The notes under the pieces are model-generated. The model had not been told where the DNA came from, did not search any database, and saw only the letters and a program-made list of their open reading frames with translations. The position numbers were made by a program, and so were the translations under genes. From assembly GCA_044892505.1 (NCBI GenBank), contig CM097882.1, positions 87,172,001-87,215,698 on the forward strand: a stretch of DNA of 43,698 nt, written 5' to 3'. Position 1 is the first letter of the stretch. Each line of letters begins with the position of its first letter. The DNA is from Schmidtea nova. Lineage: Eukaryota. Shown here in pieces: positions 1 to 25,159 of the stretch.

Positions 1-12
1 TTTCGCCTCTTT

Positions 13-1272: not shown

Positions 1273-2685
1273 CTACTCTAACCATCCTTTCGTTGACTTT
1301 GTGTTCATCACTGTTGTACTTGTTTTCTTTTCGATCTCCAACTCTACGTATAGGTTGTCCTCGTACAACATTTCCCACATTTTTTGGTGTGGTATGAATT
1401 TTGGTTCTCCCGTTGCTAATGAACATTCTGTGGTTGGTCTTTTGTAAGCCTCGTGCTTCCCATCGACTTTGAATATTCTCACAATCGTTTCTCTCGAGTT
1501 TTTCACTCTCATTATCGCCTTTGTCTCTAGTGGCCATTCCAATATGTCGTCGTAACCACCTTTACACAACGCAAAGAATAGTGACACATGCGTTTCCTTT
1601 CCTGATCCATCTCCATTTGGATAAATTCTCATCCGAACTTTGTATCCATTTTTCCACAGATAGAATGGTGGACTTGTTACCGACACTTGACTTCCTGCTT
1701 TTGCTGCTGCGAACTTTTCGTTGAAGTTCTTGATTTTCCATACATATGGTGCAACAGGTAAACTCTCGATATCCTCTGCATCTCGCACCCATATTTGATG
1801 TCGTACATTTACCTCCTTTACTAGCGTCTCTATGACTTTGATTTTCTCCATCATTTTTTCTCTGGTGAGCTCGAATTGCTCTCTCGTTTCCAGTAATAAC
1901 TCCGTCATTATCTTCTGAGATTCAATTTCTTTTCCCATTTTCTGTATGGTTTGTTCCATTCCGTTCAAATTTGCTGTTAACATCTCGGCGTGTTGTACCG
2001 TTTCCGTTTCCAAATGCTCTTTCATCTCTTTGCTCGTTTTCTTTACTACACATCCTTGTTTACTCCATACGCACTTTCTTGGTCTTGATTCGCATTGTTC
2101 CCAATGTTCTCTCAACATCACTTCTTCTCCGGTTCCGCAATTACTTGGACAAATTCCTCTGAATTTTCCACACACTTTCTCTTCTGCTACGTTGAGATGT
2201 TCTGTTTCGATTACTTCTCTCGTCTCTCTTTGTTCGCAGTATTGACACTCTATTATCTCTGCTTTGCACTCGTCCTTGTGATTTTTCGACTGCTTGATGG
2301 TTATCGTCTGTTGGCACTTTTCACATATCGCTTTCTTGTTTTCGCATTTCTCCAGATGTTGTCTTAACTCGATTATTTGTCCTTTCCATTCACATGGTTG
2401 GTTTATACACTCTGTTTTTATCTTCCAGATCTCCTTTTGTATTGCTTTGTCGGGTTTTGTCTCGTTGATCAGTAGTTTATCGTCACACTCTGGGCACTTT
2501 CTTGTCTCACTTTCACTGATTATTTGCAATATACACTTGGTGCACATCCTGCATCCACATTCCGTTTGCCTGGGTTTTAACAGTAGATTTTTACACTTTA
2601 CACACGTCACATTTACTCCCCATTGTCGATTTTCTCTTCTTAGAATCTCGATCGTTTGGTAATCTGCTTCGCTTTCTGCTCTCAT
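1273..2685 (-). CDS. TRAF: TNF receptor-associated factor (TRAF) homolog, 470 aa, intronless: RING, TRAF zinc fingers, coiled coil, MATH/TRAF-C
   Basis: RING CVKC..KPRQTECGCRMCTKC..CPEC; zinc fingers CINQPCEWKG..HLEKC and CVWSKQGC..HLE; MATH VWKIKNF..SPPFYLWKNGYKVRMRIYPNGDGSGKETHVSLFFALCKGGYDDILEWP. Confidence 0.95.
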   Translation of the reverse strand: MRAESEADYQTIEILRRENRQWGVNVTCVKCKNLLLKPRQTECGCRMCTKCILQIISESETRKCPECDDKLLINETKPDKAIQKEIWKIKTECINQPCEWKGQIIELRQHLEKCENKKAICEKCQQTITIKQSKNHKDECKAEIIECQYCEQRETREVIETEHLNVAEEKVCGKFRGICPSNCGTGEEVMLREHWEQCESRPRKCVWSKQGCVVKKTSKEMKEHLETETVQHAEMLTANLNGMEQTIQKMGKEIESQKIMTELLLETREQFELTREKMMEKIKVIETLVKEVNVRHQIWVRDAEDIESLPVAPYVWKIKNFNEKFAAAKAGSQVSVTSPPFYLWKNGYKVRMRIYPNGDGSGKETHVSLFFALCKGGYDDILEWPLETKAIMRVKNSRETIVRIFKVDGKHEAYKRPTTECSLATGEPKFIPHQKMWEMLYEDNLYVELEIEKKTSTTVMNTKSTKGWLE

Positions 2686-3708: not shown

Positions 3709-6700
3709 TTATAACTTTCTGATTCTCCTCGTTATCGTCGTGTTCCTTGGCGTGTAATAGGTTTCGCACCTTTCTTGTGGATTTCCTTGTGTATCCACTT
3801 CTTCAATTGCACACACTTCGTATTCTGCGTTTGTTTTCAACTTCCTCATTTCTACCTCGATTATTTCTCTTTTGTCATTTGATGTCTTTTGACAATTTCG
3901 TGGAGACTTTCCCTCCTTGTTTGGTATTAATTTCCAACAGATTTCTAGGACCTTTTTATGGATCTTCCATATTATCAGAGTTGATGACTCTGGTTCGTTT
4001 TCTATTGTCGTCCTTTCCGTTGTTGCCGGTTGAATTCTCTGACTGTTGGTTGTCGTGGTCCTTCTTGACTTTCTTTTCCTCTGTCGACTTCTTCCCATTT
4101 CGATCGTTCTTGTTCCGTTAATTTGCTCTGGCGTCTTGTATAGTTTACATTCCAAGCTTCTTTGTATTATTTCTCTTATTCTTCGGATTACGCAAATTTC
4201 ATATGCTTGTCCGACTTCGAATCCATTTAGTTGAAACGGAATTCCTCGTTCTCTCGTTCTGCATTGCGGTAGTACGTGACTGGTCGCTACTCCGATGTAT
4301 TTTCTCCAACACATCCCAATTGTTCTTCGACCAATGTTTTTTATCTCCACGGTTACTACTTCATTCTTAATCGTTTCTTGGTCTTGTTTCCTTCTTTTTG
4401 GGAACTCAATTATCTCCTTTGCTTGGAACACTTTACACTCGCTTGTTCCTGGTCTGTTTCCGTTTGCTGCTTTTTCCATGAGACATAGTTCACATGTTTT
4501 CTCTGTTTCTATTTCAGTTATCTCTATTTCTTCATTTGTCTCTGCTTCCCGACTTTCTCTTGTCTCGCTGATTCCAATTACTTCATTGTTTCGTCCCCAA
4601 CATCTTCCATTCGTTGTTCGTTGATCTTGGATGTTTACTAACGTCATCACGCTGATATCTATGTCCTCCATGATTCTCTTAATGAGGATTAATATTAATG
4701 CTACACATATCAATTCTGGTTGGAATGTTAATTTTCCCGCTGGATTTTTGGTTATTCTTTCTTTCTCTGTTCGGTTTCTGATTCCTTCTTCTGCTTCGGT
4801 TTGATTCTTCCCTTTCTCTGATTCCACTTCTGATCTTCTCGTTGTCTCTTCGCTTCTTTTTCCAATCCATTTCTGTATTTTCAGCGCTTCTGTTGCTTTA
4901 TATAATTGACATGCAGTTACTTGAGGTGCTTTTGGTTCTCCTCTCTGCTTTATTGCGCATATTATGTATGACTTTTCTTTCTCTAATCCTTTGATTTGGA
5001 TGACGTCTCGCTTCAAGTCTGACAATATACACTTCAGCGTATCGTTTTTCCTCAGGTTTTCCTTCCAGCATATTCTTTCGTATACTTCGTTTCCTCTGAT
5101 TATTTCCAGCGTGACGTATTGTTTCTTGGCTTCTCCTTGTCCGATGATTGTTATCAATATCGCGATACACAACATTTCTGGTCTCAAAAGTAGACTTCCT
5201 GTTCGTTTTCCATAGTTCGCATGTTCGTCTTTTGTTCCACTGTTTTCTCGTTCTTCTGCTTCTCCTTTCTTGTCGTTTCTCGTTGGCTTCGGTTCTTCTT
5301 GTCTTTCTTTTTCATTATCCTCCGTTCTTTTGTTGTCATTGTCTTCGTTGTTCTCTTCGTTGTTGCTTTTGTCGTCGAAATCTCTGTAACCACCCCCTGG
5401 TCCTTTGAAAATGTCGTCCTCGACATTGATTTCTTCAATCAATCTTTCATACGCTTGAACCGCGAGTGTGCTAGACTCGAATTCACGTATCTCCATATCC
5501 TTGGATGGTTCTATGTTTTCTAGTCTATTTTGCTTGATTGTTTCTTTGGCCTTTGCCCACTCATTCACATATTTTCTGAACAAGTCTTTCCATCTTCCCG
5601 TTCGTTCCTGTTCCTTTGGGTTGTTAGTAAATTTCAAATCTCTTCTCTTCAAGAATTCTTCAACTATCTCTGGCTTTTTGTGTCTTAGCAACGCGCTTCT
5701 GATACACCAATTCTGATTTTGTTCCATATGGTCATTGATCTTGAATGCCGGTTCCTTGGTGATCGGATTCACCCATGTTAGTAATGCTCTTGTTTTTTCT
5801 ACGTCGTGTATCATTACTGTCAGACTGAAATTCTTTACGTTATTTGCCAGGTATTCGATATCATCTTGTTTCTTGATGGACTTTATGAACTTGATCATCT
5901 CGAAGTTGTTCCACTGTATTGCGATATCTATGATGGAATTATTCTTTCCATTTTTCCCTTCGATTTTTGCTCCTGCTTCGTATAATTCACTTAGCACTTT
6001 AAAGTTCGTCTTCTTTCTTGCTGCGATTATCATGATTGTATCTCCGTTATCATCAACCATATTCATATCTGCTTCGCACTTGACCATCGCTTTCGTTATT
6101 TCCAGCACTTCGTTTTCTTTCTTTCGACGTAATGCCCAGTGTATCGGCAATCTCCCATCCTTTGATAATAGGAATGCCACTGGCATTTGATTCTTGATCG
6201 TTTCTATGTCACTCTCGTTATAATCCCCTTGTGCATATCTGTGCACTCTCTCTGTAATTGCTCCTAGTATTCCCAACGAGCTTTTATTCTCCTTGAATTT
6301 CGATAATTTTTCCTGCGCTTTTGCTACGATTGCGTCTAATCTCTCTTGATAATCGGCTTTTGCATTGAACAACACTGCCTTGCTTCTTATTCGTGTTTGC
6401 ATCTGTTTCATCCGTTGGTCTTGATACACTGCTTGTCTGAAGAATTGTCCATACTTCAATGCTTCCACCAGCTCTTTATATCTCTTGCTTATTTCTTTGT
6501 GCTGCTTTTGGATGTCATAGAAATGTTCGAAGCTCATATCCGGATTCCATTGTTTATCACACCATTTCTTGATTAATCCGAATAGTTCCTTCTTTCGGTC
6601 ATCCAACTTGTATTCTCTTGGGTTTTCGCTAACCCGTAGCGTATCTCTCGCTATCAACACTGCAAGTGTTTTTGGATCGTATGTTACCTCTAGTAGATGT

Positions 6701-9700
6701 TTCAGTAACGCATTTTCTCCCCTTGTGAATACTTCATTACAATTTACGACCCACGAATCTCCTTCTGGTCGTTTCCATTTTAGCAATATTCTCCAGGTTT
6801 TACTGTTCTTTACCCCGATTGCTTGTTTCATGATCGATCCTCTAGTTAGTTCATCGATTTCCCACGTGGCGTTTTCTGTGATATACTTAAGTAATCGGTG
6901 ATTTGCTCTATCGATTGCATGATTCAAGAATGTTCGTCCTTCTTTATCTTTTGCCATCCAACTCGATCTGGTGTTTCCGAATAGCTCGACTATTTCCTCA
7001 TCTCTTCCATGAATCGTCATCATCATAAGTGGAGTGATTCCTTCCCAATTCACTTTGTCAATTTCTCCTCCACCTTCGAGTATCATCTCTACGATCTCTT
7101 TCACTTTTTCGTTCCCACTGTGCTTGACTGCATTGTGCAACGCTGTGTTACCGTCTTTGTCTTGTAGATTCAATGTTTGAGGGATTTCCTCTAGCAGCGT
7201 TCTTGTTATTGGATGTGCTGTTCTATCCTTCGCATACTCCATTACATTCTTTCGAACTTCTGTCAATATATTGAAATCGAACCACCATTTCCATTCTGGT
7301 ATAATTTCTCTGGTCCTCTTTGCCAGTTCTTTGATGTCTATTGCTTCTCTTCGGTTGTCTTCTAGACTTGTTTGCGGCTTTTGTTGTACTCGCAACATAC
7401 TGATTCTCGCCGTCTGTGATCTTGTCATTACCCGTTTTTCTGGTAATCGAGTTGCTGTCTTTGGTACTTTTCTGCATCGACATGTATTCACGTATATTGG
7501 TCTTACCAATGGATTGTTCACCAATCGTACTCGCACATTATTTTCATTTACTGTTGTTATTTCATATGGCCCCTTGCCTGGTCGTTGGAGTTTCTTGACC
7601 GTACCGGGTATTATCTCTGGTGTCTCAATTATCACCCAATCTCCAACTTTTAAATCATGTGCTTTCACATTCTTTTTCTGGTCATGTAGATCCTTGTAAC
7701 TTTCTTGATAGAACTTGATGTTTAGTTCCGCCGTTTTCCAGATTTCCTGCATTCTTTCTTTGAACTTTGTAACGTAATCGTCAAAATCCATGTACTGCGA
7801 TAATGGTGGTTGATATTCTAAATCGATCGGTAAGTTGCAATCTCTTCCGTACATCAGTTGAAATGGACTTAGCTTTGTTGTCGCATGTATTGACATTCTG
7901 TATGCCATTAAACACAAGTTGATATACTCGTCCCAGTCAGTCTGATGTTTGCTGACGTAATTTGACAACATGCGTATCAATGTTCCATTGAATCTTTCTG
8001 TTTGTCCGTTCGTTTGTGGATGGTATGGGGATGTTCGTAATTTCGCAATTCGGAAGTAATTCGTGACTTCGTCTAATATTTCACTCATAAAATTTGTTCC
8101 TTGATCCGTTAGGATTTTCTTTGGTGTTCCGTATCTGCAGCATATTTCTTCCACCAATATTCTTGCGACTGTTTTCGCCTTTTGATCCGGTATTGCGAAT
8201 GCTTCTGGGAACTTTGTTAGATAGTCCGTGACTACTAATATGTACTGATTTCCTTTTAAACTTTCCGGCAATGGTCCAACTACATCCATTGCTATCGTCG
8301 CCATAGGTTCTGCAGGTATTGGCATTGGTTTTAGTGGTGTTTTCCACTTCGTTCCGACGTTCTTTCTTGTCGCACAGGTTAAGCAGTTCTTTATCCATTC
8401 CTTCACATCATCTTCCATGGTTGGCCAAAAGTACTTTTGTCTCAGTCTCCCGATTGTCTTTTTCGCTGACATATGTCCGCCTAATTTTCCGTCATGATAT
8501 TGAGTCATGATTTCCTTTCGTCTATTCGCAGGTAAGCACATTAATCTTCGTTCTCCATCTTGTATCAATAACCATCCTTTTTCCATCACATATCTATGTT
8601 GATATTTCTGCATATGTTCGCGCAACGTTTGGTTCTTGCCGAATATTTCTATTTCCCTTTCTTTCAAATACTTGCTGATCAATCCCAACTCCTCATCTTC
8701 GAGTTGATCTTTCCTTAGTTCGCTGAAATCCAAATCTTCCGCTATTAATGCACATATTTTTAGAGCATTCAGGTTCACCAATTCTGGGAATGTAAATCTT
8801 GACATGCAATCCGCGTTTGCATTTGCTTTTCCTGCTTTAAACTTTATGAATGGCGAGTATTCCTGCAACTGCATCGCCCAACGCATCAATCTACTTGATG
8901 ATTCTTTGTGTTGACCTAACCATACCAATGGTTGATGATCCGTCGTGATATATATTTCATGACCCCACAATAGGTATTTGAAATGCTTGATTGCCAATAT
9001 TATCGCATAGGCTTCTCTTTCCGTGACTGAGTAATTCCTTTCATGTTTCCTGAATGTTCGACTGTAATATCCGATCACTCTCTCTTTGCCTTCTTCATCG
9101 AATTGGCCTAGTACTGCTCCTGCTGCGTATCCACTTGCATCTGTTGCCAACAGAAATGGCTTCTTGAAATCTGGATGGACCAATATTGGTGCTGTAATCA
9201 GCTTGTCTCGCAATGTCTCGAATGCTGCTTGTTGCTCTTCTCCCCATACAAACGACATATCTTGTCTTACCAATTCTTGCATTGGCTTTGATATTCCTGC
9301 ATAGTCCTTGATAAACTTTCGATAATATCCACACAATCCCAAAAATTTTTGTATTTGAGTCACTGTCTTTGGTGGTGGACATTCTTTGACTTTTTCGATA
9401 TTCCTTGGATCTGGTTCTTTTCCTTTTGCTGATACAATGTGACCTAAAAATGTCACTTTCTCTTTTGCCCAATCGCACTTTGACGGCTTTAATTTCAGTT
9501 TCCATTGCCTCAATTTCACGAACACATTTCTGATATCTTGTAAGTGGTCTTCAAATGTTGCGGAGTAGATCAATAGATCGTCGATGTACACCATGCATTG
9601 TTTTATGCCATGTGTTACGAAATTCATGCATCTCTGGAATGATGCTGGCGCGTTTGTTAACCCAAACGGCATTTTCTTGAATTGGTACAGATCTCGTCCG

Positions 9701-10875
9701 ATTGTAAATGCTGTCTTTTCTTTATCCTCGTCCTTCATTTTGATCTGCCAATATCCGCTTTTTAAATCCAGTGACGTGAAATAAGCTGCTCCTTGTAAAG
9801 TCAACAACATTTCGTTTATGTCTGGCAGTGGGTACGTGTCTCTTTTCGTAACTGCGTTCAACCGTCTGTAATCGATACAGAATCTCTGAGTTCCATCCTT
9901 CTTTTTCACCATCACCACTGGGAATTGCCAGGGTGAGCAACTAGGTTCGATGACCTCCGCATCTAACATCTTTTGTACCTCTTCTTCTGCCACTGCTTTT
10001 TGAGCTTCTGCCAATTTATATGGTCTTAATGCGATTGGCGTCTCGTCCGTCAATGGTATCGTATGTAATGTTACATCACATGTTCCCAAATCCAAATCTG
10101 ATGCTGCGAATATATCTTGATACTCCATCAACAGTTTCTGTAACTGTTCTTTTTGTTGTTCGTCTAACAACACACTGTCGATTTTCCATGGTAATTCGTC
10201 TTTGCTTTTCTCATTCTTGCCTGGTATTTCGATTTCGGACATGGGTGTCAATTTGCCCAATCTCTCATTCTCGTAAATTATCTTGTCCTCTTCGTCAAAA
10301 TTCACCAGATTAATTGGTATCTCACCTTCTTGGTTTATCGTAACCAATTCTCTTGCCATTGGTAATTCCTTCTTCGCTTCGAACTTCTTACTTGGTTCGA
10401 ATATCATATCTCCCTTTATTGTTGAATCGATCTTGACATAACACATCATTTCATGTCTCGCTGGCACTACTATTTGTTCCGCACTTGCCACTTTAACTTT
10501 CATTCTGCAGATTTTTCCTGTCCTATCTTTTAGCTTCATTGCTCCTAGATCAATTACGATTTCCTTGAACAGGTCTGGCATTAGGTCAGTTCCAATAATA
10601 CATGGTACACTCAGCGATGGTATTACAGCGATGTACGTGTTGATTTCTGCACCTCGATGCTTAATTTTTACAAACCATCTTCCGGCTACTTCTACTGTCT
10701 CCTGACTGCACGCGATTACATGTACATTCGTCTTCTCGATTTCCCCTTGGTTTTTCTCTGGTATATAATTAATGTCGATCGCCGAAATATTCGCGCCTGT
10801 ATCGATCTTAGCTTCAATTTCTCTTCCGTTTATTTCTACGGTTGTTGTTAAGATTGGTCCCATGTTTGTGGACAT
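3709..10875 (-). CDS. pol: Pol polyprotein, 2388 aa: aspartic protease, dUTPase-like linker, RT, RNase H, integrase (HHCC, DDE, GPY/F), then ankyrin and FN3-like extensions
   Basis: AKIDTGANIS (PR); LDLKSGYWQI, MPFGLTNAP, YIDDLLI (RT); LATDAS, EREAYAII, TDHQPL, NANADCMSR (RH); YHDGKLGGH..CLTC, AMDVVGP, TDQG, NGQTERFN, GKGPYEI (IN). Confidence 0.98.
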   Translation of the reverse strand: MSTNMGPILTTTVEINGREIEAKIDTGANISAIDINYIPEKNQGEIEKTNVHVIACSQETVEVAGRWFVKIKHRGAEINTYIAVIPSLSVPCIIGTDLMPDLFKEIVIDLGAMKLKDRTGKICRMKVKVASAEQIVVPARHEMMCYVKIDSTIKGDMIFEPSKKFEAKKELPMARELVTINQEGEIPINLVNFDEEDKIIYENERLGKLTPMSEIEIPGKNEKSKDELPWKIDSVLLDEQQKEQLQKLLMEYQDIFAASDLDLGTCDVTLHTIPLTDETPIALRPYKLAEAQKAVAEEEVQKMLDAEVIEPSCSPWQFPVVMVKKKDGTQRFCIDYRRLNAVTKRDTYPLPDINEMLLTLQGAAYFTSLDLKSGYWQIKMKDEDKEKTAFTIGRDLYQFKKMPFGLTNAPASFQRCMNFVTHGIKQCMVYIDDLLIYSATFEDHLQDIRNVFVKLRQWKLKLKPSKCDWAKEKVTFLGHIVSAKGKEPDPRNIEKVKECPPPKTVTQIQKFLGLCGYYRKFIKDYAGISKPMQELVRQDMSFVWGEEQQAAFETLRDKLITAPILVHPDFKKPFLLATDASGYAAGAVLGQFDEEGKERVIGYYSRTFRKHERNYSVTEREAYAIILAIKHFKYLLWGHEIYITTDHQPLVWLGQHKESSSRLMRWAMQLQEYSPFIKFKAGKANANADCMSRFTFPELVNLNALKICALIAEDLDFSELRKDQLEDEELGLISKYLKEREIEIFGKNQTLREHMQKYQHRYVMEKGWLLIQDGERRLMCLPANRRKEIMTQYHDGKLGGHMSAKKTIGRLRQKYFWPTMEDDVKEWIKNCLTCATRKNVGTKWKTPLKPMPIPAEPMATIAMDVVGPLPESLKGNQYILVVTDYLTKFPEAFAIPDQKAKTVARILVEEICCRYGTPKKILTDQGTNFMSEILDEVTNYFRIAKLRTSPYHPQTNGQTERFNGTLIRMLSNYVSKHQTDWDEYINLCLMAYRMSIHATTKLSPFQLMYGRDCNLPIDLEYQPPLSQYMDFDDYVTKFKERMQEIWKTAELNIKFYQESYKDLHDQKKNVKAHDLKVGDWVIIETPEIIPGTVKKLQRPGKGPYEITTVNENNVRVRLVNNPLVRPIYVNTCRCRKVPKTATRLPEKRVMTRSQTARISMLRVQQKPQTSLEDNRREAIDIKELAKRTREIIPEWKWWFDFNILTEVRKNVMEYAKDRTAHPITRTLLEEIPQTLNLQDKDGNTALHNAVKHSGNEKVKEIVEMILEGGGEIDKVNWEGITPLMMMTIHGRDEEIVELFGNTRSSWMAKDKEGRTFLNHAIDRANHRLLKYITENATWEIDELTRGSIMKQAIGVKNSKTWRILLKWKRPEGDSWVVNCNEVFTRGENALLKHLLEVTYDPKTLAVLIARDTLRVSENPREYKLDDRKKELFGLIKKWCDKQWNPDMSFEHFYDIQKQHKEISKRYKELVEALKYGQFFRQAVYQDQRMKQMQTRIRSKAVLFNAKADYQERLDAIVAKAQEKLSKFKENKSSLGILGAITERVHRYAQGDYNESDIETIKNQMPVAFLLSKDGRLPIHWALRRKKENEVLEITKAMVKCEADMNMVDDNGDTIMIIAARKKTNFKVLSELYEAGAKIEGKNGKNNSIIDIAIQWNNFEMIKFIKSIKKQDDIEYLANNVKNFSLTVMIHDVEKTRALLTWVNPITKEPAFKINDHMEQNQNWCIRSALLRHKKPEIVEEFLKRRDLKFTNNPKEQERTGRWKDLFRKYVNEWAKAKETIKQNRLENIEPSKDMEIREFESSTLAVQAYERLIEEINVEDDIFKGPGGGYRDFDDKSNNEENNEDNDNKRTEDNEKERQEEPKPTRNDKKGEAEERENSGTKDEHANYGKRTGSLLLRPEMLCIAILITIIGQGEAKKQYVTLEIIRGNEVYERICWKENLRKNDTLKCILSDLKRDVIQIKGLEKEKSYIICAIKQRGEPKAPQVTACQLYKATEALKIQKWIGKRSEETTRRSEVESEKGKNQTEAEEGIRNRTEKERITKNPAGKLTFQPELICVALILILIKRIMEDIDISVMTLVNIQDQRTTNGRCWGRNNEVIGISETRESREAETNEEIEITEIETEKTCELCLMEKAANGNRPGTSECKVFQAKEIIEFPKRRKQDQETIKNEVVTVEIKNIGRRTIGMCWRKYIGVATSHVLPQCRTRERGIPFQLNGFEVGQAYEICVIRRIREIIQRSLECKLYKTPEQINGTRTIEMGRSRQRKRKSRRTTTTNSQRIQPATTERTTIENEPESSTLIIWKIHKKVLEICWKLIPNKEGKSPRNCQKTSNDKREIIEVEMRKLKTNAEYEVCAIEEVDTQGNPQERCETYYTPRNTTITRRIRKL
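3738..5075 (-). other. Four Cys-containing FN3-like repeats in the pol-frame C-terminus
   Basis: Repeating CW..(L/F)xxxxxY/CxxC..CxxY/FxT pattern: GLEKEKSYIICAI..CQLYKAT; EIETEKTCELCL..CKVFQAK; GFEVGQAYEICVI..CKLYKTP; KLKTNAEYEVCAI..CETYYTP. Signal-like segments precede repeats 1 and 2 (PEMLCIAILITIIGQGEA; PELICVALILILI). Confidence 0.65.
5870..7165 (-). other. Two ankyrin-repeat clusters (about 6890-7165 and 5870-6165) in the pol-frame C-terminus
   Basis: DKDGNTALHNAV, NWEGITPLMMM, DKEGRTFLNHAI; SKDGRLPIHWAL, DDNGDTIMIIAA, NGKNNSIIDIAI. Confidence 0.9.
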
Positions 10876-10914
10876 AACCGCTATCGTGTGCGTGTCTTCT
10901 AACGAGTCTACGCT

Positions 10915-13900
10915 TTAACCTCGTTTTACTTTGCATCCTTCTGGAATTATCGGGTATATACTTGTCATCGGCATCATCTGCATCATATTCGGCTTCGCTT
11001 TGTATATCGGTTCGTTATACATTGATTGGGGTGGAGCACTGTATCTCCAATTCTCAACTGCACTCTTTTCGGTATACTGTGGAATCTGGTTTATATTCGC
11101 TTGTCCTCCTTGATCGTCATCGTCGTCATCATCATTGCTTGAGTCATCTTGTGTTCGATATCCCTTCACTCTTTCCCATAATCCTTTCCTTTCTTTCTTG
11201 AGTTGTCGTCTTGCTTGCTCGTCTTGCATTATCTTTTTGAATTTCCTTCCGACATCTTCATTTGTTCCTTTCATTTTAGCAAGTATCTTCAACAATCTTT
11301 TTATTCGATGTATGTTTTTTGAGTGTCCGTGCAACACCATTGTTTTCGCAAGGAATGGTAAAAACCCTACTACCATTTTCCAATTCACTTTCTTCTCTCT
11401 CTTGTAGATATCGAAGCACGCTAACATTTGCGTTATTATCACTCTGACAATTTGTATTATCAATATCACTCCCAGTATTCCAGCCATCATTTGTCCGAAT
11501 ATCAGGAATCTTCCCCACATTGCTTTCATCATATTTTCTGTGGCTTTCTTGAAATGTGCTGGTGACAATAACAGTTCATAATTCGGTCCTTCTCGATAAT
11601 CCGTTCCTCCCGTTATCGTTACGATATTTGACAGTAATGCTTCTCTTCTTGCCGGGAATAATATATTCTGTCTCGCCGCTTCCAAATCTTTTGGGCTATA
11701 TATTCCGTTGTTTGAGACATCTACGTCGCTGAACTGTCTATCCTTTGACAACTGCATCAGTTCAAATTCTCTTGGTGCTAATACTTCGGTTCTTCCTGGG
11801 AACATTACCCATTTGCCATCTGGTTTCTGATAAAGCGGTCCGTATGCGTTACTACAGTTGAATGGATTTGGTTCGAATCCTGGTGGATTGATGATTCTCG
11901 TCACCGGTTGAACGTATCGTACTTTTCCTTTGTAATCGATTTCTAGTTCGTTTGTACAAGTTCCTGGTTTCAACTGCGTTGTTGCTGCTAGCGATGCATG
12001 TGTCTTTTCGCAAATGTATACGTACATTGCTTCTCCGACCACTCTTCCGAAATGTCCTTCTCTCAGTGGTAATAACGGCATCGCGCTATCTGGATTCGTA
12101 ATCGCTACGGCCAACTTTGTCTTTAATATTTCTCGATTCAGTATACAATCGTTGTTTATCAGATCATAGTACACTTTTTGCAATGAGGCTTGTCCTCTAT
12201 GGAATAAGAAATCCATTTTATTATTCACATACAAGTGTAGCTTGATATCCATTGTGTCGATCTTGGGTTTCGCATTCGGCACTTCTTGCTTTGACACGTA
12301 TATTCCTGGATAGTTTGTTTCGTATACCGTTGTACTGCACTTAAGGGTTGCTTTCCCTTTTATGAATCTCATGCCCACATCCTGATTTGTGGTTATCAAC
12401 ACTGTTGGTGTGGTTCTCATTTCTATCCGTTTCTCTCTATGATCCGGTTTCAATTGTCTTTTATTCTCTAAAGCTTCTTTGAGATGCTTTGCTCTAGCTT
12501 TGTCATCATCGTCCTCTTCTTGGAATGTTTTTCCTTGAATTTCGTCGAACTTTGCTCCTTGTAGCAGTTGTAATTGACATTCGTTCACCTTTGGTTTATA
12601 CACCAATGTTGACATTCCCGTTTGACACATGCTCCTGTCAATTTTACACATGGATAACGTTTTCATTTCTCCCGTTGTTGGTTCGAAGAATGCTTCGTAG
12701 CTTTTCAGTTCGACTATATACGTATCCATCACCACCAAGTTGGTTGCAAGTACTCCGAATATCGGGTAGGTTTCTCCTTGACAATACCCTTCTCCTCCCG
12801 TAATCCGTCCTGCTACATAGTACGTCTGCTGTAACATCATTCCTGGTTTTCCTTTTATCTTGATTTTATCCCTTGTTGTTACTTCTCCATGTTTGAACAA
12901 TGCTTCGCAGTCTTCTCCTTGCAACACGATTGGTTCTCTTTCCGTTCCTGGCATGACAATTGCTGAATAATGCCCTCTCCCACAATAGAATGCGAATCTC
13001 GTCTTCTGCACCTTGCATTCATTCACCATTGTCTTTATTAGTTCTGCTTCTTGATACACGTGGTACCATTGTTCCTTTTTAATCTCTCTCAACTCTACTG
13101 GAGATGCATCTTTGCATTGCTCCGTACCTCTCAATGAATACTTTTCTCCCAATTTCATTTGATCACAATCAAATACTTCGAACGTTGTTACACCTTCTGT
13201 GCTTAACAACCATACTAACATCATCATGATTATCGAGTTTAAATTCAACGTCGATCTTCCATTTCCTTGCATCGTTTGTCTATTCTCCATTTCTCTCAAT
13301 ACTCCTTCGAGTTTCTTTCTCATCACGTTAGACCCTTCTTTTGTCTGGTTCTCTTTTATGAACTTTTCCCATCCTCCTTTCCTGAGGATATATGGTTCAA
13401 TTTCTTTCTCGATAATCATCGCCGTATTTTTAATATGTCTTCCCATCGGACTTGACTTCGGACTTCCTCGGCTTAGCGTTAACAAATTGTATATCGTATA
13501 CGAGATTGCTACCAGATATTTGCTGTCCATTTCTGCTCCGTTGAGTAGCCTTTTTATTAACCTCGTGGTTCCTTGCCAATCTAGATGATTCGATTTTGTT
13601 TTTGCTTTGATTAATTCTGGCATAATCGGTGCTATCGCATTGTGTAGCATCTTTGCCTTTGTACTAGGTTCGTTTATCCGCCACAAATTCTTTAATTCCG
13701 GGTCGATTATCGCTAGTACATCCATTATCGTTTTGGTGAGCCATTCTTCTCCTTGACAAACTTGATTCTCCTCTTTGCCTCTGATCTCTGCGATTTTATC
13801 CAATTTCTTCAAGCAAATCTCCCATTGCTCTTGTCTCCTTTCTTCCCTTGTCTTTGGAATTGCTGTTGTTGGGTCTATCTTTGGTCTTCCTCTTGGTCGT

Positions 13901-14001
13901 TTTTCCATTCCAGTTCCGGTTTCTACAAATCTCGTTGCTCTTCCCGTTTCTTCCGTAACATCTCTTCCTTCGTTTGCTCGTTGTTCTAACCATCTTTTCA
14001 T
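10915..14001 (-). CDS. env: AT-hook plus Bcl-2-like domain fused to a chuvirus-G-like class III envelope glycoprotein (1028 aa)
   Basis: Env motifs FEVFDC..C, FYCG, DCILNREILKTKLAVA, GHFGRVVGEAMYVYIC, CTNELEI..QPVTRII, CSNAYGPLY..W, GIYSPKDL..ILFP, TM WGRFLIFGQMMAGILGVILIIQIV. N-terminal KRPRGRPK; BH2-like YILRKGGWEKF. Confidence 0.85.
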   Translation of the reverse strand: MKRWLEQRANEGRDVTEETGRATRFVETGTGMEKRPRGRPKIDPTTAIPKTREERRQEQWEICLKKLDKIAEIRGKEENQVCQGEEWLTKTIMDVLAIIDPELKNLWRINEPSTKAKMLHNAIAPIMPELIKAKTKSNHLDWQGTTRLIKRLLNGAEMDSKYLVAISYTIYNLLTLSRGSPKSSPMGRHIKNTAMIIEKEIEPYILRKGGWEKFIKENQTKEGSNVMRKKLEGVLREMENRQTMQGNGRSTLNLNSIIMMMLVWLLSTEGVTTFEVFDCDQMKLGEKYSLRGTEQCKDASPVELREIKKEQWYHVYQEAELIKTMVNECKVQKTRFAFYCGRGHYSAIVMPGTEREPIVLQGEDCEALFKHGEVTTRDKIKIKGKPGMMLQQTYYVAGRITGGEGYCQGETYPIFGVLATNLVVMDTYIVELKSYEAFFEPTTGEMKTLSMCKIDRSMCQTGMSTLVYKPKVNECQLQLLQGAKFDEIQGKTFQEEDDDDKARAKHLKEALENKRQLKPDHREKRIEMRTTPTVLITTNQDVGMRFIKGKATLKCSTTVYETNYPGIYVSKQEVPNAKPKIDTMDIKLHLYVNNKMDFLFHRGQASLQKVYYDLINNDCILNREILKTKLAVAITNPDSAMPLLPLREGHFGRVVGEAMYVYICEKTHASLAATTQLKPGTCTNELEIDYKGKVRYVQPVTRIINPPGFEPNPFNCSNAYGPLYQKPDGKWVMFPGRTEVLAPREFELMQLSKDRQFSDVDVSNNGIYSPKDLEAARQNILFPARREALLSNIVTITGGTDYREGPNYELLLSPAHFKKATENMMKAMWGRFLIFGQMMAGILGVILIIQIVRVIITQMLACFDIYKREKKVNWKMVVGFLPFLAKTMVLHGHSKNIHRIKRLLKILAKMKGTNEDVGRKFKKIMQDEQARRQLKKERKGLWERVKGYRTQDDSSNDDDDDDDQGGQANINQIPQYTEKSAVENWRYSAPPQSMYNEPIYKAKPNMMQMMPMTSIYPIIPEGCKVKRG
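13360..13800 (-). other. Bcl-2-like domain
   Basis: EPYILRKGGWEKF matches the BH2 pattern; MDSKYLVAISYTIYNL lies about 50 aa upstream and aligns to the BH1/alpha5 pattern (NWGRIVALFYF) with NWGR degenerate; helical composition; C-terminal hydrophobic segment. Confidence 0.65.
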
Positions 14002-14016
14002 TTCTTGAGTAAACTA

Positions 14017-14235
14017 TGGTTGTTCTTGCTCGTCTTCGGAATCGTTTACCATTTCTATGACTACCTCCTGTTCCACTCCTTGATCGTCGATTTCTGCTGG
14101 TGACGTTACTGGCATCTCTATTATTCTGTCGAAAATATTCGCCGTTGGTTTTTGAGTTAACTTCGTTAATTCTTCTATCGCTTCGTCACTGTCTGTTAAT
14201 ATTTCGTCTACGTCATACGCTTCTGGCGGTGTTCT
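14017..14235 (-). other. 73-codon open acidic linker, in frame between ORF2 and the Bcl-2/env ORF, bounded by two TAG codons
   Basis: Manual translation RTPPEAYDVDEILTDSDE...DSEDEQEQP; TAG at 14236-14238 and 14014-14016, then FTQE and ATG 14001, all in one frame. Confidence 0.75.
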
Positions 14236-16474
14236 CTATCTCGTTTTGATTGGTGTTGTCCTTGCTTGTCCCGAACTTGTTCCTGGGATCATTGCTGACT
14301 TCATCGGACTTGGTGTACTCATGCTTCCTTTCGGTTTCTTTTCCTCTTTAAACTTCAGTGGTTGACCCACTATCTGTGCCACTGTTAGCGTATTCATTAG
14401 ATCCAATTGCACTGGTGTCAGCCAGATTTCCAACTTGTTATCCAACGATCGTCCTTGATGTTGCAGGTGGAATGGTAGTTCGTACATCAGTTTCTCTTTA
14501 ACACTTTTCACTTTTTCTGTTAGCATCACCCAAAACTCTTCTTTTCTCTGATTTGGATACATTATCCTCAAATGTATTTTCTGTGGCGTTTCCTCCGCAA
14601 ATTCTTTGTTTCTCCACTTTTTTATTACATTGTCTAGTTGCTCTGGACACCACTCATTAACTCTCTTGTATTCTGCTATCGCTTTAGCTGCTTTTCTCAA
14701 GTTCGTCATGTCTTCTCCATTTGCGATTATAAAATCTGCTAAGCCTTTTATTGTTTGTCTTTTTCCCCGAGTATTTCCTCTCAACAGTTCTATTAATTCA
14801 TCCGTTTTCTGTTTCTCCAATTCTGCCCATATTACTGCAGTTTCTGGTCCGTCTAAGTCCGTTGGTAATAACCTCCTTGTTACCATACATATCCGTTTCG
14901 TATTCGATTCATATCTGTCTTCTCCTTCTGGATCTTCTTCATACACGCCTCTTTTCACTTTCCAACATTTCTCTTTGTTATCCCATTGCTTCTCTACTGG
15001 CGTCAATCGTCGTCTGTTAAGATCCAATTCTCCCAATATTGTCTCCCATTCTGGCTTCATCTGCCAGTTCCGATAGATTTCTACTATCTGCCTCAACTTG
15101 CGCATAACGTCCTCTTGTCGTTTCTTTCTCCTTTCTTCATCTCTTGGTGTTGCTCTTGGCACATCATCCATTCTGATGACGTGTATTGTCTGGGAATTGT
15201 CCCATATGCCGATTTTATACGCTCGTCTTTCGTCACGTTCATTCAGTAGATGTTCTTTGTATTTTATCGCAATGTCATCCTCGAATTCATCTTCCCGTTC
15301 TCGTTGTAATATCGTCTCATTGATGACATCTACTATTTCTCCCACTTTACTATCTGGTATTACCTCAATTTGTCTTGTCTCTTCGTTCGGTAATCTCACA
15401 GTAATCATCAGATCTGATACCTCTCCTCGTCTAAACATTTCTTTTCCCATCTTTGCGATTAGCTTGTCCGTTTTGAAATTTGAATGTCTCGTTTGACTTG
15501 TATCTCGTATGTTCTCGATACACTGTTTCAAATTCTCATACTCGCTTTTTGTCAATTCCTTTCGATGTTTCTTGATTTGTTGGATGATCTGTTCTATCAT
15601 CGTATTCAAATTCTCTGCCAAGATTCGTTCCTTTGCCTCTATCAACTGAGGTTTTATTCTCATCTCATAACACGTATTCGCTTCTTTGACGATTCCTTGT
15701 AAGTTCTCTTCCTTCTTGGTGTTGCATATTGATAACGTTGTTATTTCTCCTGGCCATATGCCTGTGTCTATCATATGCGTTCCTTTTTTCACTAATCCGT
15801 TTTCCGAATATATGAACTTGTCTTTGTACGAGCTTCCCAATCTGTCCTCAACCCATCTGTAGATTCCATCTGTCATTGGGTTCTTTATCCAGATTCTCGG
15901 TGAACACTCGTTTATCCATATCTGTATTATGTATTCGTTGAGTGGTTCTTTCAATAACTTCTCTATGAACTCTTGTATTACTCTCACTTCTCTTTCTTGT
16001 AACCACTCTTTATACTTCATCTGCCATATTGCTCGTATGAACTTTCGGTATCGTTTCTTGTCGATAAACTCCTCGTTATGGATTACTTCCAACACGTTAT
16101 CCATCAGCTTCTGAATTTCGTCTTCCTTTACCGACATCGTTTCTATCGTCTCGACTACTTCCATCTTTTTATCCTCGTTTTCCGGTTCCTTTAGCATGTC
16201 TCCTGCCAGACTGCTAACTTCGCTGTCGTCTTCTTCATCTGACAACTCTTGTCTTGGGTGTCTCAGCATCCCAATATGCGCGGTTGGTCTCACTTCGTTT
16301 TTGCTAACTTCCTGCGTTAGTTCATTCTCGTTTCCCGTTATTTCAGCTTTTCCCATTCTTTTCTCCAACTCATCTATTTCTTCAAACCGTCTTCGTCTTA
16401 TTTTCCCTTTAAATATCCGACTGATCCGAGTTTGATGTTTCACTGGTGGTGGGAGTTTCTCCGGTTCCACCTCT
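14236..16474 (-). CDS. ORF2 (gag extension) with two ubiquitin-like domains, about 15170-15410 and 14380-14580
   Basis: MITVRLPNEETRQIEVIPDSKVGEIVDVI and IHLRIMYPNQRKEEFWVMLTEKVKSVKEKL..LQHQGRSLDN resemble the ubiquitin beta-grasp pattern ([35 protein letters not shown]). Joins the gag frame if the 14-nt duplication at 16461-16488 is removed. Confidence 0.65.
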
Positions 16475-18729
16475 CCGGTTCCACCTCTCTGATGATCATC
16501 ACGTTCATTTTCGTCTCCGTTACTCCCATATCTTCCCATATATCAGTCATCTTCAACTTTACTTCCGGTAAATCCTCTGTTTGTAGGAATGCTTCTCTGG
16601 GTAGTTTCGTCACTCCCGGCATCATCTCATTTACTTTATTGAACAATCTTCCCACTTCTTCTTTTACATTGTATTTGAATCGCCACACGTGATCATTCAG
16701 CATGATCACCAACATTCCTCTTTGTTTGATTCTCACTTCTTCTTCTTGATTCACTTCTTTTTCTGTTTCTTTTTCTATTTCTGTTTCTTTTTCTACTTCT
16801 TCAACTTTTTGATTCTGCTCTGCGGTTTCTACTTCCTGATTCATTTCTTCTTGTTTCTGCTCTTCGTTTCTTTTCTCTTTAACTTCTAACTCGTCTGACT
16901 CATCTTGCTGCTTCTCTTCCATCATTGCTCGCATCATGTTGATCCTTGGGTTTCCCTTTTTTAACAGTTGTAATCGTTGTTGCCTGACTTGTTCTTCTTC
17001 TCGTCGTACTCTGGCCCATTCTTGATTATGTTTCTGTTGGCTTTCTCTATTTTCTCTTTCAGCCTCAGCTTCTATTAACTGGATCATGTTTATCTTTGGT
17101 TGAGCAGCTTGCTGGCTTCCCTTTGCCATGCTTTCGATTATCTCGTGTAATCTGGATACCTCCTGTCTCAACTTGGCCTCTTTCATACTGGCTTCGTTTG
17201 CACTGCTATTTGGGTTGTTCCGTTGTTGACCCTGATTCCCATAACTTGATCGATTTCCGTAATTCTGTCTATTTCCACTGTTTGACCAACTTCTCTGTTG
17301 ATTACACTCTCTTGACATGTGTCCCGTTTTCCCACATGTGTAACACATTTTCCCGTAACATCGATTCTCTGAGTGACCTTTTTGTCCACACAGTTTACAG
17401 GCTACATTCTGAAAACACTCTTGTTGCCAATGTCCGTTTTTCCCACACGTCTGACATTGCCTATTCTGCCTGTCATTGTAACTATTTCCTCCACTCGTGT
17501 TCACTGTGATATATCCATTATTTTTCCTCGCTGGCGGTTCTTTGAACAATCTCTGCGAATGGGGAATACTTTGATTCATGTTTCTTTTTCCTTGTTCTTC
17601 ATCTTCTGTCGTTTTTCCCATTACCGCCGTAATTCTCATGTCGTTCATTGCCATATGCAATTCGAATAGGTTGGCTGCTTCTAACGCTTCATCTACTGTT
17701 TTACATCCTTTGCATCCCACTTGTGCTCTGATGTCAGGTCTCCTGAGACCTCGTACGAATAACGCTGTCATCAATTCTTCGTCTACTGGGCTTCCTCTAT
17801 TGAATGCCAGTTTCGCCAACTTTCTTAATTCGCTTGCGTATACCGCATTTGACTCATTTCTCCTCTGTTTTCTTGCTGAGAACTCATCGAACGCTTCTTT
17901 CAACACTTTATTTATCCCAAACGTCTGTTGGAAGAACTCCTTGATTGCTTCCCACGTTCTGGGTGGATTACTTCCCGATCTCTTTTCAATATACAGATCC
18001 AATGCGCTATCTTTCAAGTATAGCGGGATTCGATTTGCCAACGTTTCTGCACTTTATCCGCATATATCCACGAATATGCCAAATTCCTTTAGAAACGTGT
18101 CCAATCTACTGGCGTCTCCATCGAATGGTTCGCCCTTGAATTTTTCTCTCAGATCCTCTCTGTGTTCACTCATCCCGATTCCACTGTCTTGGAATACTGT
18201 ACTAGTTTTCTTTGCTTCTATTTCACCACTTGTTTCTGGATTCAACTCTTCTTCTTCAATACTCTCTGTTTCGTTATCTCTTGATTCGCTTCTTGTTCTG
18301 TTTTCACTAACTAGTTCACAGTCTATCGTTTCTACTTCGTTTCGTACTTCTGGATCCTCTGGGGTTTCTTCTTGGTTCTCTTTATTACTCGAATTATCGC
18401 TGATCTCTGCTGGTTTGTTCTTCAGTTGCGCTGCTTTATTTCTTGGCCTTGTCTTCTTCGCTGTTTTTCTTTCTTCTTCTGTTAGGATTGGTATTATACC
18501 TGTCCTTGTTTTGCGTTCCGCAATCTTGTCTATTACTCAACTTCTTATATTCTCAACTGATTTTCTACTTCGCTTTTGCTTTGCTTCTTCTTCGATTTGT
18601 TTCCTTTGACTGCTCTGACTGCTAGATTGCCTGGAATTGCTTGATTGATTTGTTTCCTTAAAACAAATAATCACTTACACGATACGTCCCCGTTATCGTG
18701 TTTCTCGTCCCTCTCACGGGTGTAGTCAT
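16440..18729 (-). pseudogene. gag: gag (capsid plus three CCHC knuckles), disrupted in this copy by TGA 18537-18539, TAA 18054-18056 and a 14-nt duplication
   Basis: GEPFDGDASRLDTFLKEF..ICG*SAE..IPLYLKDSALDLY..TWEAIKEFFQQTF..RKQRRNES..YASELRKLA; CQTCGKNGHWQQEC, CKLCGQKGHSENRC, CYTCGKTGHMSREC. The frame is continuous across both stops up to 18656. Confidence 0.9.
18657..18678 (-). promoter_or_regulatory. Consensus splice donor GTAAGT (18678) and in-frame acceptor (18657): putative 22-nt intron or major splice donor
   Basis: Minus strand ATG(18729)-MTTPVRGTRNTITGTYR|GTAAGTGATTATTTGTTTTAAG|GAA ACA (ETNQ..) joins in phase 0 with gag. Confidence 0.5.
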
Positions 18730-20979: not shown

Positions 20980-21438
20980 TTACAAGTACACTGTTACTTT
21001 CTCGGATACGGGAAAATTGCACATAGGACATCGTTCATTTATTTTACAGTCATTACAGAATCGAAAATGCCCACACGGCAGCAACATTATCTGTATCTTA
21101 TTTATTTCACAGATGTAACACGTCAGATACTGTCTCGTATATTCGGTTGTCGTTCTTATCCACTCATCGTGTTTTGTTGCAATCTGTCGTTCTAGCCTGT
21201 GGCATTCGATATTCATTTCAGGGTTGTTTAATCTTTCTCTGTACCATTTGTATCTCGTTGCTGTATCAACTGTATTCTTATTCTCGCTTATGCTCATCAT
21301 CATTTCGGCTCTTTCTGTGTTGTTTGTCGGTTCGTGATATCTTCCTACCTCGAGTCGTTTTAACTTTCTCATTATTATCTCCATTGTCTCGTTGTTTGTT
21401 TCAAAAAACGTTTGCATTTCTTTTATTTTGTTCTCCAT
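20980..21438 (-). CDS. C-terminal IAP/Mdm2-type C3HC4 RING protein (152 aa, no BIR); putative E3 ligase
   Basis: CYICEINKIQIMLLPCGHFRFCNDCKINERCPMCNFPVSEKVTVYL at the extreme C-terminus; same A-rich codon bias as the element. Confidence 0.85.
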   Translation of the reverse strand: MENKIKEMQTFFETNNETMEIIMRKLKRLEVGRYHEPTNNTERAEMMMSISENKNTVDTATRYKWYRERLNNPEMNIECHRLERQIATKHDEWIRTTTEYTRQYLTCYICEINKIQIMLLPCGHFRFCNDCKINERCPMCNFPVSEKVTVYL

Positions 21439-25119: not shown

Positions 25120-25159
25120 ATGCTGCTCGATTTGGCTGGCCCAACAAGAATATATAAAA

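What the first reader, a model, noticed from the sequence alone, without database searches (positions are those of the whole stretch)
5870..7400. Integrase C-terminus fused to two ankyrin-repeat clusters
About 1250 extra codons follow GPY/F with no stop. The first part holds two clusters of about three ANK repeats separated by a helical region (seen). Gypsy integrases usually end at GPY/F or a chromodomain. Inference: IkB-like or substrate-recruiting effectors released by the protease, or an integration-targeting module.
Basis: partly seen in the sequence, partly recalled or inferred. Interest (0 to 1): 0.75.

Follow-up and report, generated by a model that had tools for sequence, protein, structure and literature searches.

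The report
Ankyrin modules in giant retroelement polyprotein
The integrase of a giant, envelope-carrying Gypsy-type retroelement (of the planarian 'Burro' kind) really does run on into two copies of a 230-residue ankyrin-repeat module, a feature already noted in print for such elements, whose job (probably binding host proteins) is still untested.

Summary
On the minus strand, one open frame of 2388 codons (3709-10875) holds protease, RT, RNase H and integrase. It then runs 1248 more codons without a stop (chance about 1e-37). The extension holds two collinear copies of a ~230-residue ankyrin module, M1 (6580-7269) and M2 (5578-6270). After these come an acidic stretch and four FN3-like repeats.

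The surrounding element is over 22 kb. It has Gag, a class III fusion glycoprotein in frame between gag and pol, a TRAF homologue and a RING ORF. This is the architecture published for planarian Burro/GYPSM1 elements, where ankyrin repeats were already listed.

Relatives from metagenome assemblies have about 50% pol identity, and all but one (possibly cut) of the 22 continue at least 320 residues past integrase. Three carry the same module: two after integrase, one between env and protease. Module identity tracks pol identity at roughly half its level, so the module looks inherited and retained but fast-evolving.

No IkB-specific, F-box/PRANC, SOCS or chromodomain signal was found. The effector reading is plausible by association. 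The integration-targeting reading is weakened by the module's variable position.

Verdict: a new member of a known kind, of moderate interest.

The parts
3709..18041 (-). Gag-to-pol coding span of the element, given as one part. Compared with the single-ORF layout of relatives, it shows one change of frame and three in-frame stops upstream of the pol frame. There are none inside the 2388-codon pol frame.
17181..18041 (-). Gag-like region with two CCHC zinc knuckles
   Evidence: Pfam zf-CCHC 7.2e-10; BLASTP to the N-termini of relatives' polyproteins
11215..13851 (-). Envelope-like class III fusion glycoprotein domain, in the same frame as pol and upstream of it
   Evidence: PF24664 Monjiviricetes_fusion E 4.8e-73; 33-39% identity to the env parts of 15 relatives; frame analysis
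10573..10845 (-). Retropepsin-like protease (pol residues 11-101)
9433..9909 (-). Reverse transcriptase (residues 323-481)
8857..9246 (-). RNase H (residues 544-673)
7456..8532 (-). Integrase: zinc domain, rve core and a C-terminal part with GPY/F at ~1100. This is the end of the region conserved with relatives (residues 782-1140).
7270..7455 (-). Basic linker between integrase and the first ankyrin module (residues 1141-1202); no family match
6580..7269 (-). Ankyrin module M1 (residues 1203-1432): a leading helix, three canonical repeats (about 1233-1342) and further degenerate repeats
6271..6579 (-). Inter-module linker (residues 1433-1535), K/E/Q-rich and probably helical
   Evidence: (low-confidence model)
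5578..6270 (-). Ankyrin module M2 (residues 1536-1766), collinear with M1 (229 columns, 19% identity, z = 14.8)
5206..5577 (-). Post-M2 helical stretch and acidic low-complexity region (residues 1767-1890)
3712..5205 (-). C-terminal tail (residues 1891-2388): two hydrophobic segments and four ~90-residue repeats with an invariant C-W..C..C pattern. The fold looks FN3-like, on a weak hint only.
1273..2685 (-). Separate ORF downstream of pol: a TRAF homologue (RING, TRAF zinc finger, TRAF-C/MATH)
   Evidence: Pfam; PDB TRAF2/1/5/3 at about 1e-26
20980..21438 (-). Small ORF upstream of gag with a C-terminal C3HC4 RING finger
   Evidence: PF13920 6.8e-09

Best explanation
The window's first ~24 kb is most of a giant, envelope-carrying Ty3/Gypsy retroelement of the Burro type, lying on the minus strand. 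Its polyprotein continues past integrase into two tandem copies of a ~230-residue ankyrin-repeat module, each about 6-7 repeats of which three are canonical.

Shown: the module is real, in frame and duplicated. It shares the element's base composition. It is homologous to a module in three related elements, where it occupies different places in the polyprotein. It diverges about twice as fast as the pol core.

Inferred: the module is a self-contained protein-binding unit that the element lineage has kept because it is useful. It is probably freed from the polyprotein by the element's protease. It probably binds host proteins, most plausibly in the TRAF / NF-kB / apoptosis / ubiquitin network, from which the element's other accessory genes (a TRAF homologue and a RING ORF) are drawn. 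The binding partner is unknown.
For: Ankyrin Pfam hits exceed gathering scores in both halves.

The frame is open for 1248 codons, with P about 1e-37, and third-position composition is the same as the pol core.

M1 and M2 are collinear over 229 columns, z = 14.8.

An HMM built from M1, M2, P0237 and P0270 hits the untrained P0218 at 127 bits over positions 3-222 of 234. The best of the 150 top generic ankyrin proteins, drawn from 1.84 billion representatives, reaches at most 57 bits with partial coverage.

An HMM built from the three relatives alone hits M2 at 44.5 bits, the best score outside the training set, and M1 at 31.4 bits. Both hits run the full length of the model.

Module identity tracks core identity: 78/52, 57/32 and 50-51/22-27 %.

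The module's position varies among relatives.

The same element carries a TRAF homologue and a RING ORF.

The literature lists MATH_TRAF, BIR, BCL2-like, RING and ankyrin motifs in Burro/GYPSM1 and suggests they meddle with apoptosis and ubiquitination (PMC6431247).

Viral ankyrin proteins that block NF-kB or recruit ubiquitin ligases are known in polydnaviruses and poxviruses (PMC3757122, PMC3359993, PMC4353913).
Against: No partner-specific signal was found. PDB and whole-library hits are generic ankyrin proteins only, and there is no F-box/PRANC, SOCS or degron-type domain.

Only 3 of 22 relatives have the module, so it is dispensable for the family.

The leave-out score of M1 is no better than that of several generic ankyrin proteins.

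Cleavage from the polyprotein is untested.

This copy has one frame change and three in-frame stops upstream of pol, so it may not be expressed at all.

dN/dS was not measured.
Confidence: 0.55

Rival explanations
1. Integration-targeting tether. The ankyrin modules stay attached to integrase and dock the pre-integration complex onto a chromatin or nuclear protein, as chromodomains do in chromoviruses.
For: The modules start only ~60 residues after the conserved integrase C-terminus, in the same frame. That is where other Gypsy lineages carry targeting domains (established knowledge). Two relatives, P0237 and P0270, also carry the module downstream of integrase.
Against: In P0218 the homologous module lies between env and protease, far upstream of integrase. 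In P0237 and P0270 one or two protease-like domains and hundreds of residues separate it from integrase. Nineteen relatives have none. No chromodomain or other known targeting domain was found.
Confidence: 0.17
2. Role in the element's own polyprotein processing or particle assembly, for example a scaffold or regulator placed next to a protease domain, rather than action on host signalling.
For: In P0218 and P0237 the module ends within ~10-100 residues of a retropepsin-like domain. Most relatives carry extra protease-like domains after integrase, which shows that this region of the polyprotein is tied to processing.
Against: In the window the modules are not next to any protease-like domain, and the post-integrase protease-like domain of the relatives is absent here. 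Most relatives do without the module.
Confidence: 0.1
3. Functionless passenger: a host ankyrin fragment once captured and now drifting, open in this copy only because the copy is young.
For: The module is present in a minority of relatives and evolves fast. This copy shows a frame change and in-frame stops upstream. No function-specific motif was found.
Against: M1 and M2 have diverged to 19% identity yet remain collinear and open. The module is shared with elements whose pol core is only 50% identical, and its divergence scales with the core's. Its composition matches the element, not the AT-rich flank. Drift over that distance would have erased both the frame and the similarity.
Confidence: 0.13

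Closest known systems
Burro / GYPSM1 giant Gypsy-like LTR retroelements of planarians (Jurka 2007; Grohme et al. 2018; reviewed in PMC6431247)
   Same: Giant size. Gag with CCHC knuckles. Env homologous to mononegavirus fusion glycoproteins lying in frame between gag and pol. PR-RT-RH-IN order. Accessory MATH/TRAF, RING and ankyrin motifs. Internal tandem repeats. A very AT-rich host flank, as in Schmidtea (over 70% A/T, PMC11410931).
   Different: Here TRAF is a separate ORF downstream of pol. No BIR, BCL2-like, Ubi2 or dUTPase match was found. The coding span is not one ORF in this copy. Direct sequence comparison with Burro was not possible with these tools, and the text of the review does not say where the ankyrin repeats lie relative to integrase.
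GAG-ENV-POL Ty3/gypsy 'errantiviruses' with class III (gB-type) envelope in Platyhelminthes, Nematoda and Bryozoa (PMC13524379)
   Same: The gene order gag-env-pol and a class III fusogen.
   Different: That survey reports no ankyrin or other post-integrase accessory modules (no occurrence of 'ankyrin'). The Pfam match here is to the rhabdovirus-G-type family PF24664.
Metagenome-assembled relatives P0218, P0237 and P0270, and 19 others
   Same: Pol core identity of 47-51% over 99-100% of the core. Env lies in the same polyprotein. There are long post-integrase extensions. Three carry the same ~230-residue ankyrin module.
   Different: They carry the module once, not twice, and at other positions. 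Most have one to three extra retropepsin-like domains after integrase, which the window lacks. Host and habitat are unknown; one relative is filed under a bacterial MAG.
Polydnavirus vankyrins (PMC3757122, PMC3359993) and poxviral ANK/PRANC proteins (PMC4353913)
   Same: Ankyrin-repeat proteins encoded by a virus or virus-like entity alongside other host-derived signalling genes. They are of similar size to one module.
   Different: Those are free-standing genes with demonstrated IkB homology or a C-terminal F-box-like PRANC domain. Here the modules are embedded in pol, show no IkB-specific similarity and have no PRANC. The likeness is functional analogy only.
Chromodomain-bearing integrases of chromoviruses
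   Same: An extra protein-binding domain fused after the GPY/F region of a Gypsy integrase.
   Different: No chromodomain is present here, and the ankyrin module is not consistently placed next to integrase in relatives.

Membership tests
Ty3/Gypsy (Metaviridae) pol | Domain order PR-RT-RNase H-IN, with an H2C2 zinc domain, an rve core and GPY/F | tested here: met
   Pfam hits in that order; GPY/F motif at residue ~1100; best named hits are Gypsy-type pols
Burro-type giant planarian retroelement | Internal region far above the usual ~10 kb | tested here: met
   Coding-strand composition and ORFs run from window base 1 to about 24.5 kb. The 3' end lies off the window and no LTR pair is present.
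Burro-type giant planarian retroelement | Env homologous to mononegavirus fusion glycoproteins, in frame between gag and pol | tested here: met
   PF24664 at 4.8e-73; same frame as pol
Burro-type giant planarian retroelement | Accessory MATH/TRAF, RING and ankyrin motifs | tested here: met
Burro-type giant planarian retroelement | BIR, BCL2-like, Ubi2/SUMO-like and dUTPase motifs | tested here: not met
   No such Pfam hits in any ORF scanned. These motifs also vary between published Burro elements (PMC6431247).
Burro-type giant planarian retroelement | Sequence similarity to Burro-1..4 / GYPSM1, and a planarian host | not testable with these tools
   No Burro sequence is held in any searchable collection. 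Protein searches returned no planarian-named hit. The AT-rich flank is only consistent with such a host.
Ankyrin repeat superfamily | Repeats scoring above Pfam gathering thresholds | tested here: met
   Ank_2 68.6 bits against a cut-off of 27.3; both halves score separately
IkB / vankyrin | Closer similarity to IkB-family ankyrin domains than to generic ankyrin proteins | tested here: not met
   The M1+M2 profile finds no IkB, Bcl-3 or p105 among the top 60 PDB sequences. With the single-sequence query, Bcl-3 appears only near rank 50.
IkB / vankyrin | Binding to Rel-homology proteins | not testable with these tools
   No host proteome and no co-folding tool were available
Poxviral ANK/PRANC or ANK-SOCS (ASB) ligase adaptors | C-terminal F-box-like PRANC or SOCS box after the repeats | tested here: not met
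   No such hit at Pfam E<=1 in residues 1141-2388
Chromovirus-type targeting integrase | Chromodomain after GPY/F | tested here: not met
   No chromodomain hit

The most novel reading that the evidence does not exclude
The two ankyrin modules are IkB-like decoys. Together with the element's own TRAF homologue and RING protein, they would form a retroelement-borne kit that interferes with NF-kB and apoptosis signalling in the host. That would be an immune-evasion repertoire of the polydnavirus or poxvirus kind, carried inside the pol polyprotein of an invertebrate retrovirus-like element and evolving fast under host pressure.
Probability: 0.15. Interest if true: 0.8.

Novelty: new member of a known kind. 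Interest (0 to 1): 0.45.

Why it matters
Giant Burro-type elements are the clearest case of a retroelement hoarding host-like signalling domains, yet none of those domains has been studied. This analysis makes three points. First, the ankyrin part is a defined ~230-residue unit. Second, the lineage inherits it, it moves within the polyprotein, and it evolves about twice as fast as pol. Third, it shows no IkB-specific signal. Together these turn a passing annotation into a unit that can be surveyed across flatworm genomes and modelled against host proteins. If the module does target host immunity or cell-death signalling, it would show that retrovirus-like elements of invertebrates use the same mimicry strategy as large DNA viruses.

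Tried and rejected
**Steps that gave nothing useful**
- Self-BLAST of the extension found no internal repeat. Smith-Waterman alignment with shuffles did find it.
- Word searches with the extension and with the IN-ANK junction found only generic ankyrin proteins.
- The full HMMER search of residues 1141-2300 was swamped by multi-repeat ankyrin proteins. The four long hits checked were pure ankyrin or NACHT proteins, with no pol.
- Exact-product look-ups with the window's own pol and env found nothing.
- Single-sequence AlphaFold of residues 1141-1868 was useless, with pLDDT 35.
- A MAFFT alignment of the modules with whole relatives scattered the short rows (A1), so no alignment-based fold of the module was possible.
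- Rfam found nothing.
- No element fragments were found in the flank.
- Two pseudoscorpion gene models with pol plus ankyrin (P0216, P0267) each hold two pol copies and do not match the module HMM. They are composite models, not precedents.
- Grohme et al. 2018 is not held in the paper library.
- A hit on 'Burro' in PMC8195603 was only the author name Burroughs.

- translated one frame across stops inside a script, only to count them.
- wrote residues 1141-2388 of the uninterrupted ORF to a scratch file by re-joining two adjacent pieces of that same ORF. No frames or stops were bridged.
- built HMM profiles for searching.
Full report
**1. What is there**

The minus strand of window bases 1 to about 24,500 is coding-dense, about 40% G+C and strongly A-rich on the coding strand. 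The rest of the window is 21-35% G+C and has no related coding sequence.

The finding lies in one open frame of 2388 codons, 3709-10875. Pfam places these domains in it:

| Domain | Residues |
|---|---|
| Retropepsin | 11-101 |
| Reverse transcriptase | 323-481 |
| RNase H | 544-673 |
| Integrase zinc domain | 782-839 |
| rve core | 856-953 |
| Ankyrin families (Ank_2 E 6.9e-19) | around 1232-1276 and 1579-1665 |

The GPY/F motif is at about residue 1100. Similarity to relatives stops at 1138-1140, so 1248 codons follow integrase. The other two frames of the same DNA carry a stop every 15 codons or so. The chance of such an open frame is therefore about 1e-37.

**2. Anatomy of the extension**

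- A ~60-residue basic linker (1141-1202) comes first.
- Module M1 covers residues 1203-1432 (window 6580-7269).
- A ~100-residue K/E/Q-rich linker follows.
- Module M2 covers residues 1536-1766 (window 5578-6270).
- A helical and then strongly acidic stretch runs to residue 1890.
- A 498-residue tail ends the frame.

BLAST did not see the duplication. A local alignment puts M1 on M2 over 229 columns with two small gaps, at 19% identity and 14.8 standard deviations above shuffles.

Each unit has three canonical repeats (PDB alignments at 1233-1342 and 1574-1665). Flanking helical hairpins are also present, and some generic ankyrin proteins align to them (HMM positions up to ~212). That gives about 6-7 repeats in all.

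Third-position base composition of this part equals that of the pol core. It is thus an old resident of the element, not a recent capture.

The tail holds two hydrophobic segments and four ~90-residue repeats with an invariant C-W..C..C pattern. A four-row AlphaFold model is all-beta with pLDDT 60, and its Foldseek hits are almost all FN3 domains at E about 0.1. This is a hint, not a finding.

**3. The element around it**

Upstream on the same strand lie three features:
- a small RING ORF (20980-21438);
- a Gag-like region with two CCHC knuckles;
- an unassigned ~770-residue stretch and a class III fusion-glycoprotein domain (PF24664, E 4.8e-73), which are in the same frame as pol.

Downstream of pol is a separate ORF (1273-2685) with RING, TRAF zinc finger and TRAF-C/MATH domains. 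Its closest PDB matches are TRAF2/1/5/3 at about 1e-26.

Relatives have gag, env and pol in one ORF. Compared with them, this copy shows one change of frame (Gag against the rest, in the -1 relation usual for retroelements) and three in-frame stops upstream of pol. There are none inside pol. After the pol stop the frame closes for good, with 10 stops in 341 codons. I cannot tell whether the upstream interruptions are programmed recoding or decay. No LTR pair is in the window, and the 3' end lies beyond base 1.

**4. What is known**

The review PMC6431247 describes the planarian giant Gypsy-like elements Burro/GYPSM1:
- they exceed 30 kb;
- they have a Gag with CCHC knuckles;
- their env has hits to mononegavirus fusion glycoproteins and lies in frame between gag and pol;
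- they have PR-RT-RH-IN, plus MATH_TRAF_C, RING (AIR1), Smc, BIR, BCL2-like and ankyrin motifs;
- the review suggests that they meddle with apoptosis and ubiquitination.

The window matches this architecture in env position, TRAF, RING, ankyrin, internal tandem repeats and an AT-rich host flank (Schmidtea is over 70% A/T, PMC11410931). No BIR, BCL2-like, Ubi2 or dUTPase match was found.

GAG-ENV-POL Gypsy elements with class III envelopes are also reported from Platyhelminthes, Nematoda and Bryozoa, without mention of ankyrin (PMC13524379). So ankyrin repeats in such an element are already in print, but only as a listed motif.

**5. Relatives**

Searches with the extension alone found only generic ankyrin proteins. 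This held even with HMMER run against 1.84 billion representatives.

A search with the pol core found 22 true relatives from ENA/JGI metagenome assemblies. They show 47-51% identity over 99-100% of the core, and most have PF24664 env in the same protein. The next-best hits are pseudoscorpion Gypsy pols at 38%.

All but one of the 22 continue 320-1366 residues beyond the integrase match. The exception is P0244, which ends 26 residues after the match on a 6.6-kb contig and may be cut.

In most relatives the first ~140 residues of that extension are a second retropepsin-like domain. An HMM built from them hits the window's protease (E 6e-15) but nothing in the window's extension.

Three relatives have ankyrin:

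| Relative | Module residues | Position in the polyprotein |
|---|---|---|
| P0237 | 1499-1741 | after integrase, before a further protease-like domain |
| P0270 | 1111-1351 | after integrase and protease-like domains |
| P0218 | 2093-2335 | between env and protease |

**6. Is it the same module?**

An HMM built from M1, M2, P0237 and P0270 hits the untrained P0218 at 127 bits over positions 3-222 of 234. The best of the 150 top generic ankyrin proteins reaches 57 bits, mostly over the three canonical repeats.

An HMM built from the three relatives alone hits M2 at 44.5 bits, the best score outside the training set, and M1 at 31.4 bits. Both hits run the full length of the model. Generic proteins reach at most 38.6 bits. 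Homology is therefore well supported among the relatives, reasonably supported for M2 and weaker for M1.

Pairwise identities of module and core rise and fall together:

| Pair | Core identity | Module identity |
|---|---|---|
| P0237-P0270 | 78% | 52% |
| P0270-P0218 | 61% | 35% |
| P0237-P0218 | 57% | 32% |
| window-others | 50-51% | 22-27% |

The simplest reading is descent with the element at about twice the pol rate, with relocation inside the polyprotein and loss in many lineages.

**7. How it most likely works**

Shown: a retained, fast-evolving, position-independent ankyrin unit sits in a polyprotein that also brings a TRAF homologue and a RING protein.

Inferred: it is a protein-binding unit, released by the element's protease, that engages host proteins. 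By association these would be in the TRAF / NF-kB / cell-death / ubiquitin network. Polydnavirus vankyrins and poxviral ankyrin proteins work this way (PMC3757122, PMC3359993, PMC4353913).

Two things count against a specific IkB or ligase-adaptor assignment. A profile of M1+M2 finds no IkB, Bcl-3 or p105 among the top 60 PDB sequences. Pfam at E<=1 finds no PRANC/F-box, SOCS box or chromodomain.

The integration-tether reading is weakened by the module's position in P0218 and by the domains that separate it from integrase in P0237 and P0270. The passenger reading is weakened by collinear, open survival across deep divergence. A role beside protease domains remains possible.

**8. Limits and steps left out**

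- The host species is not identified.
- dN/dS was not measured, because I did not fetch the DNA of the relatives. I could not tell whether the bar applies, so the step is left out and referred.
- Two look-ups with the window's own proteins were made earlier and found nothing.
- Scripts read frames across stops only to count them. They re-joined only adjacent pieces of one uninterrupted ORF, and built search profiles but no consensus.
- No structural model of the module could be obtained.

**9. Verdict**

The element is a new member of the known Burro-type kind. The added value is the definition of the ankyrin unit, its duplication here, its homologues at other positions in relatives and its rate of change. 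Interest is moderate.

Noticed in passing
window 11215-13851 (-): A class III fusion-glycoprotein domain (PF24664, rhabdovirus-G type) lies upstream of pol in the same reading frame. This is the gag-env-pol order rather than the usual gag-pol-env.
   Followed up: partly
window 1273-2685 (-): A full-length TRAF homologue (RING, TRAF zinc finger, TRAF-C/MATH; PDB TRAF2/1/5/3 at about 1e-26) forms a separate ORF downstream of pol. Its composition matches the element's.
   Followed up: partly
window 20980-21438 (-): A small ORF with a C-terminal C3HC4 RING finger (PF13920, the type found at the end of IAP proteins) lies upstream of gag. No BIR domain was found.
   Followed up: no
window 3712-5205 (-): The last 498 residues of the pol frame hold two hydrophobic, membrane-span-like segments. 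They also hold four ~90-residue repeats with an invariant C-W..C..C pattern. A shallow-alignment model is all-beta and its weak fold matches are nearly all FN3 domains. No relative has this tail.
   Followed up: partly
relatives P0214, P0224, P0226, P0228, P0235, P0236, P0237, P0249, P0251, P0270 (residues just after the integrase match): Most relatives carry one to three extra retropepsin-like domains directly after integrase. The window's element has none there.
   Followed up: partly
window 14236-16539 (-): A ~770-residue stretch between Gag and env, in the pol frame, has no Pfam or PDB match. In Burro this position holds MATH/TRAF, Ubi2 and BCL2-like motifs, and in relative P0218 a ubiquitin-like domain.
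   Followed up: partly
window 19765-20301: Tandem repeats of 19-71 bases lie inside the 5' part of the element. Published Burro maps also show internal tandem repeats.
   Followed up: no
window 29872-30584: A satellite of about 29 copies of a 24-base AT-rich unit lies in the flank. Further ~280- and ~630-base direct repeats lie at 38.1-40.9 kb.
   Followed up: no
window 17578-18609 (+): A 343-codon ORF runs antisense to gag, is S/L/F-rich and has no family match. It is probably a by-product of the T-rich antisense strand, which is poor in stop codons.
   Followed up: no
protein P0247: One relative of this eukaryotic-type retroelement is filed in NCBI under a Flavobacteriaceae metagenome-assembled genome. 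It is probably a mis-binned contig.
   Followed up: no
window 25000-28000: Just past the element the AT skew flips to strongly positive (up to +0.48) for about 3 kb. There are no ORFs and no similarity to the element's proteins. This is unexplained.
   Followed up: partly
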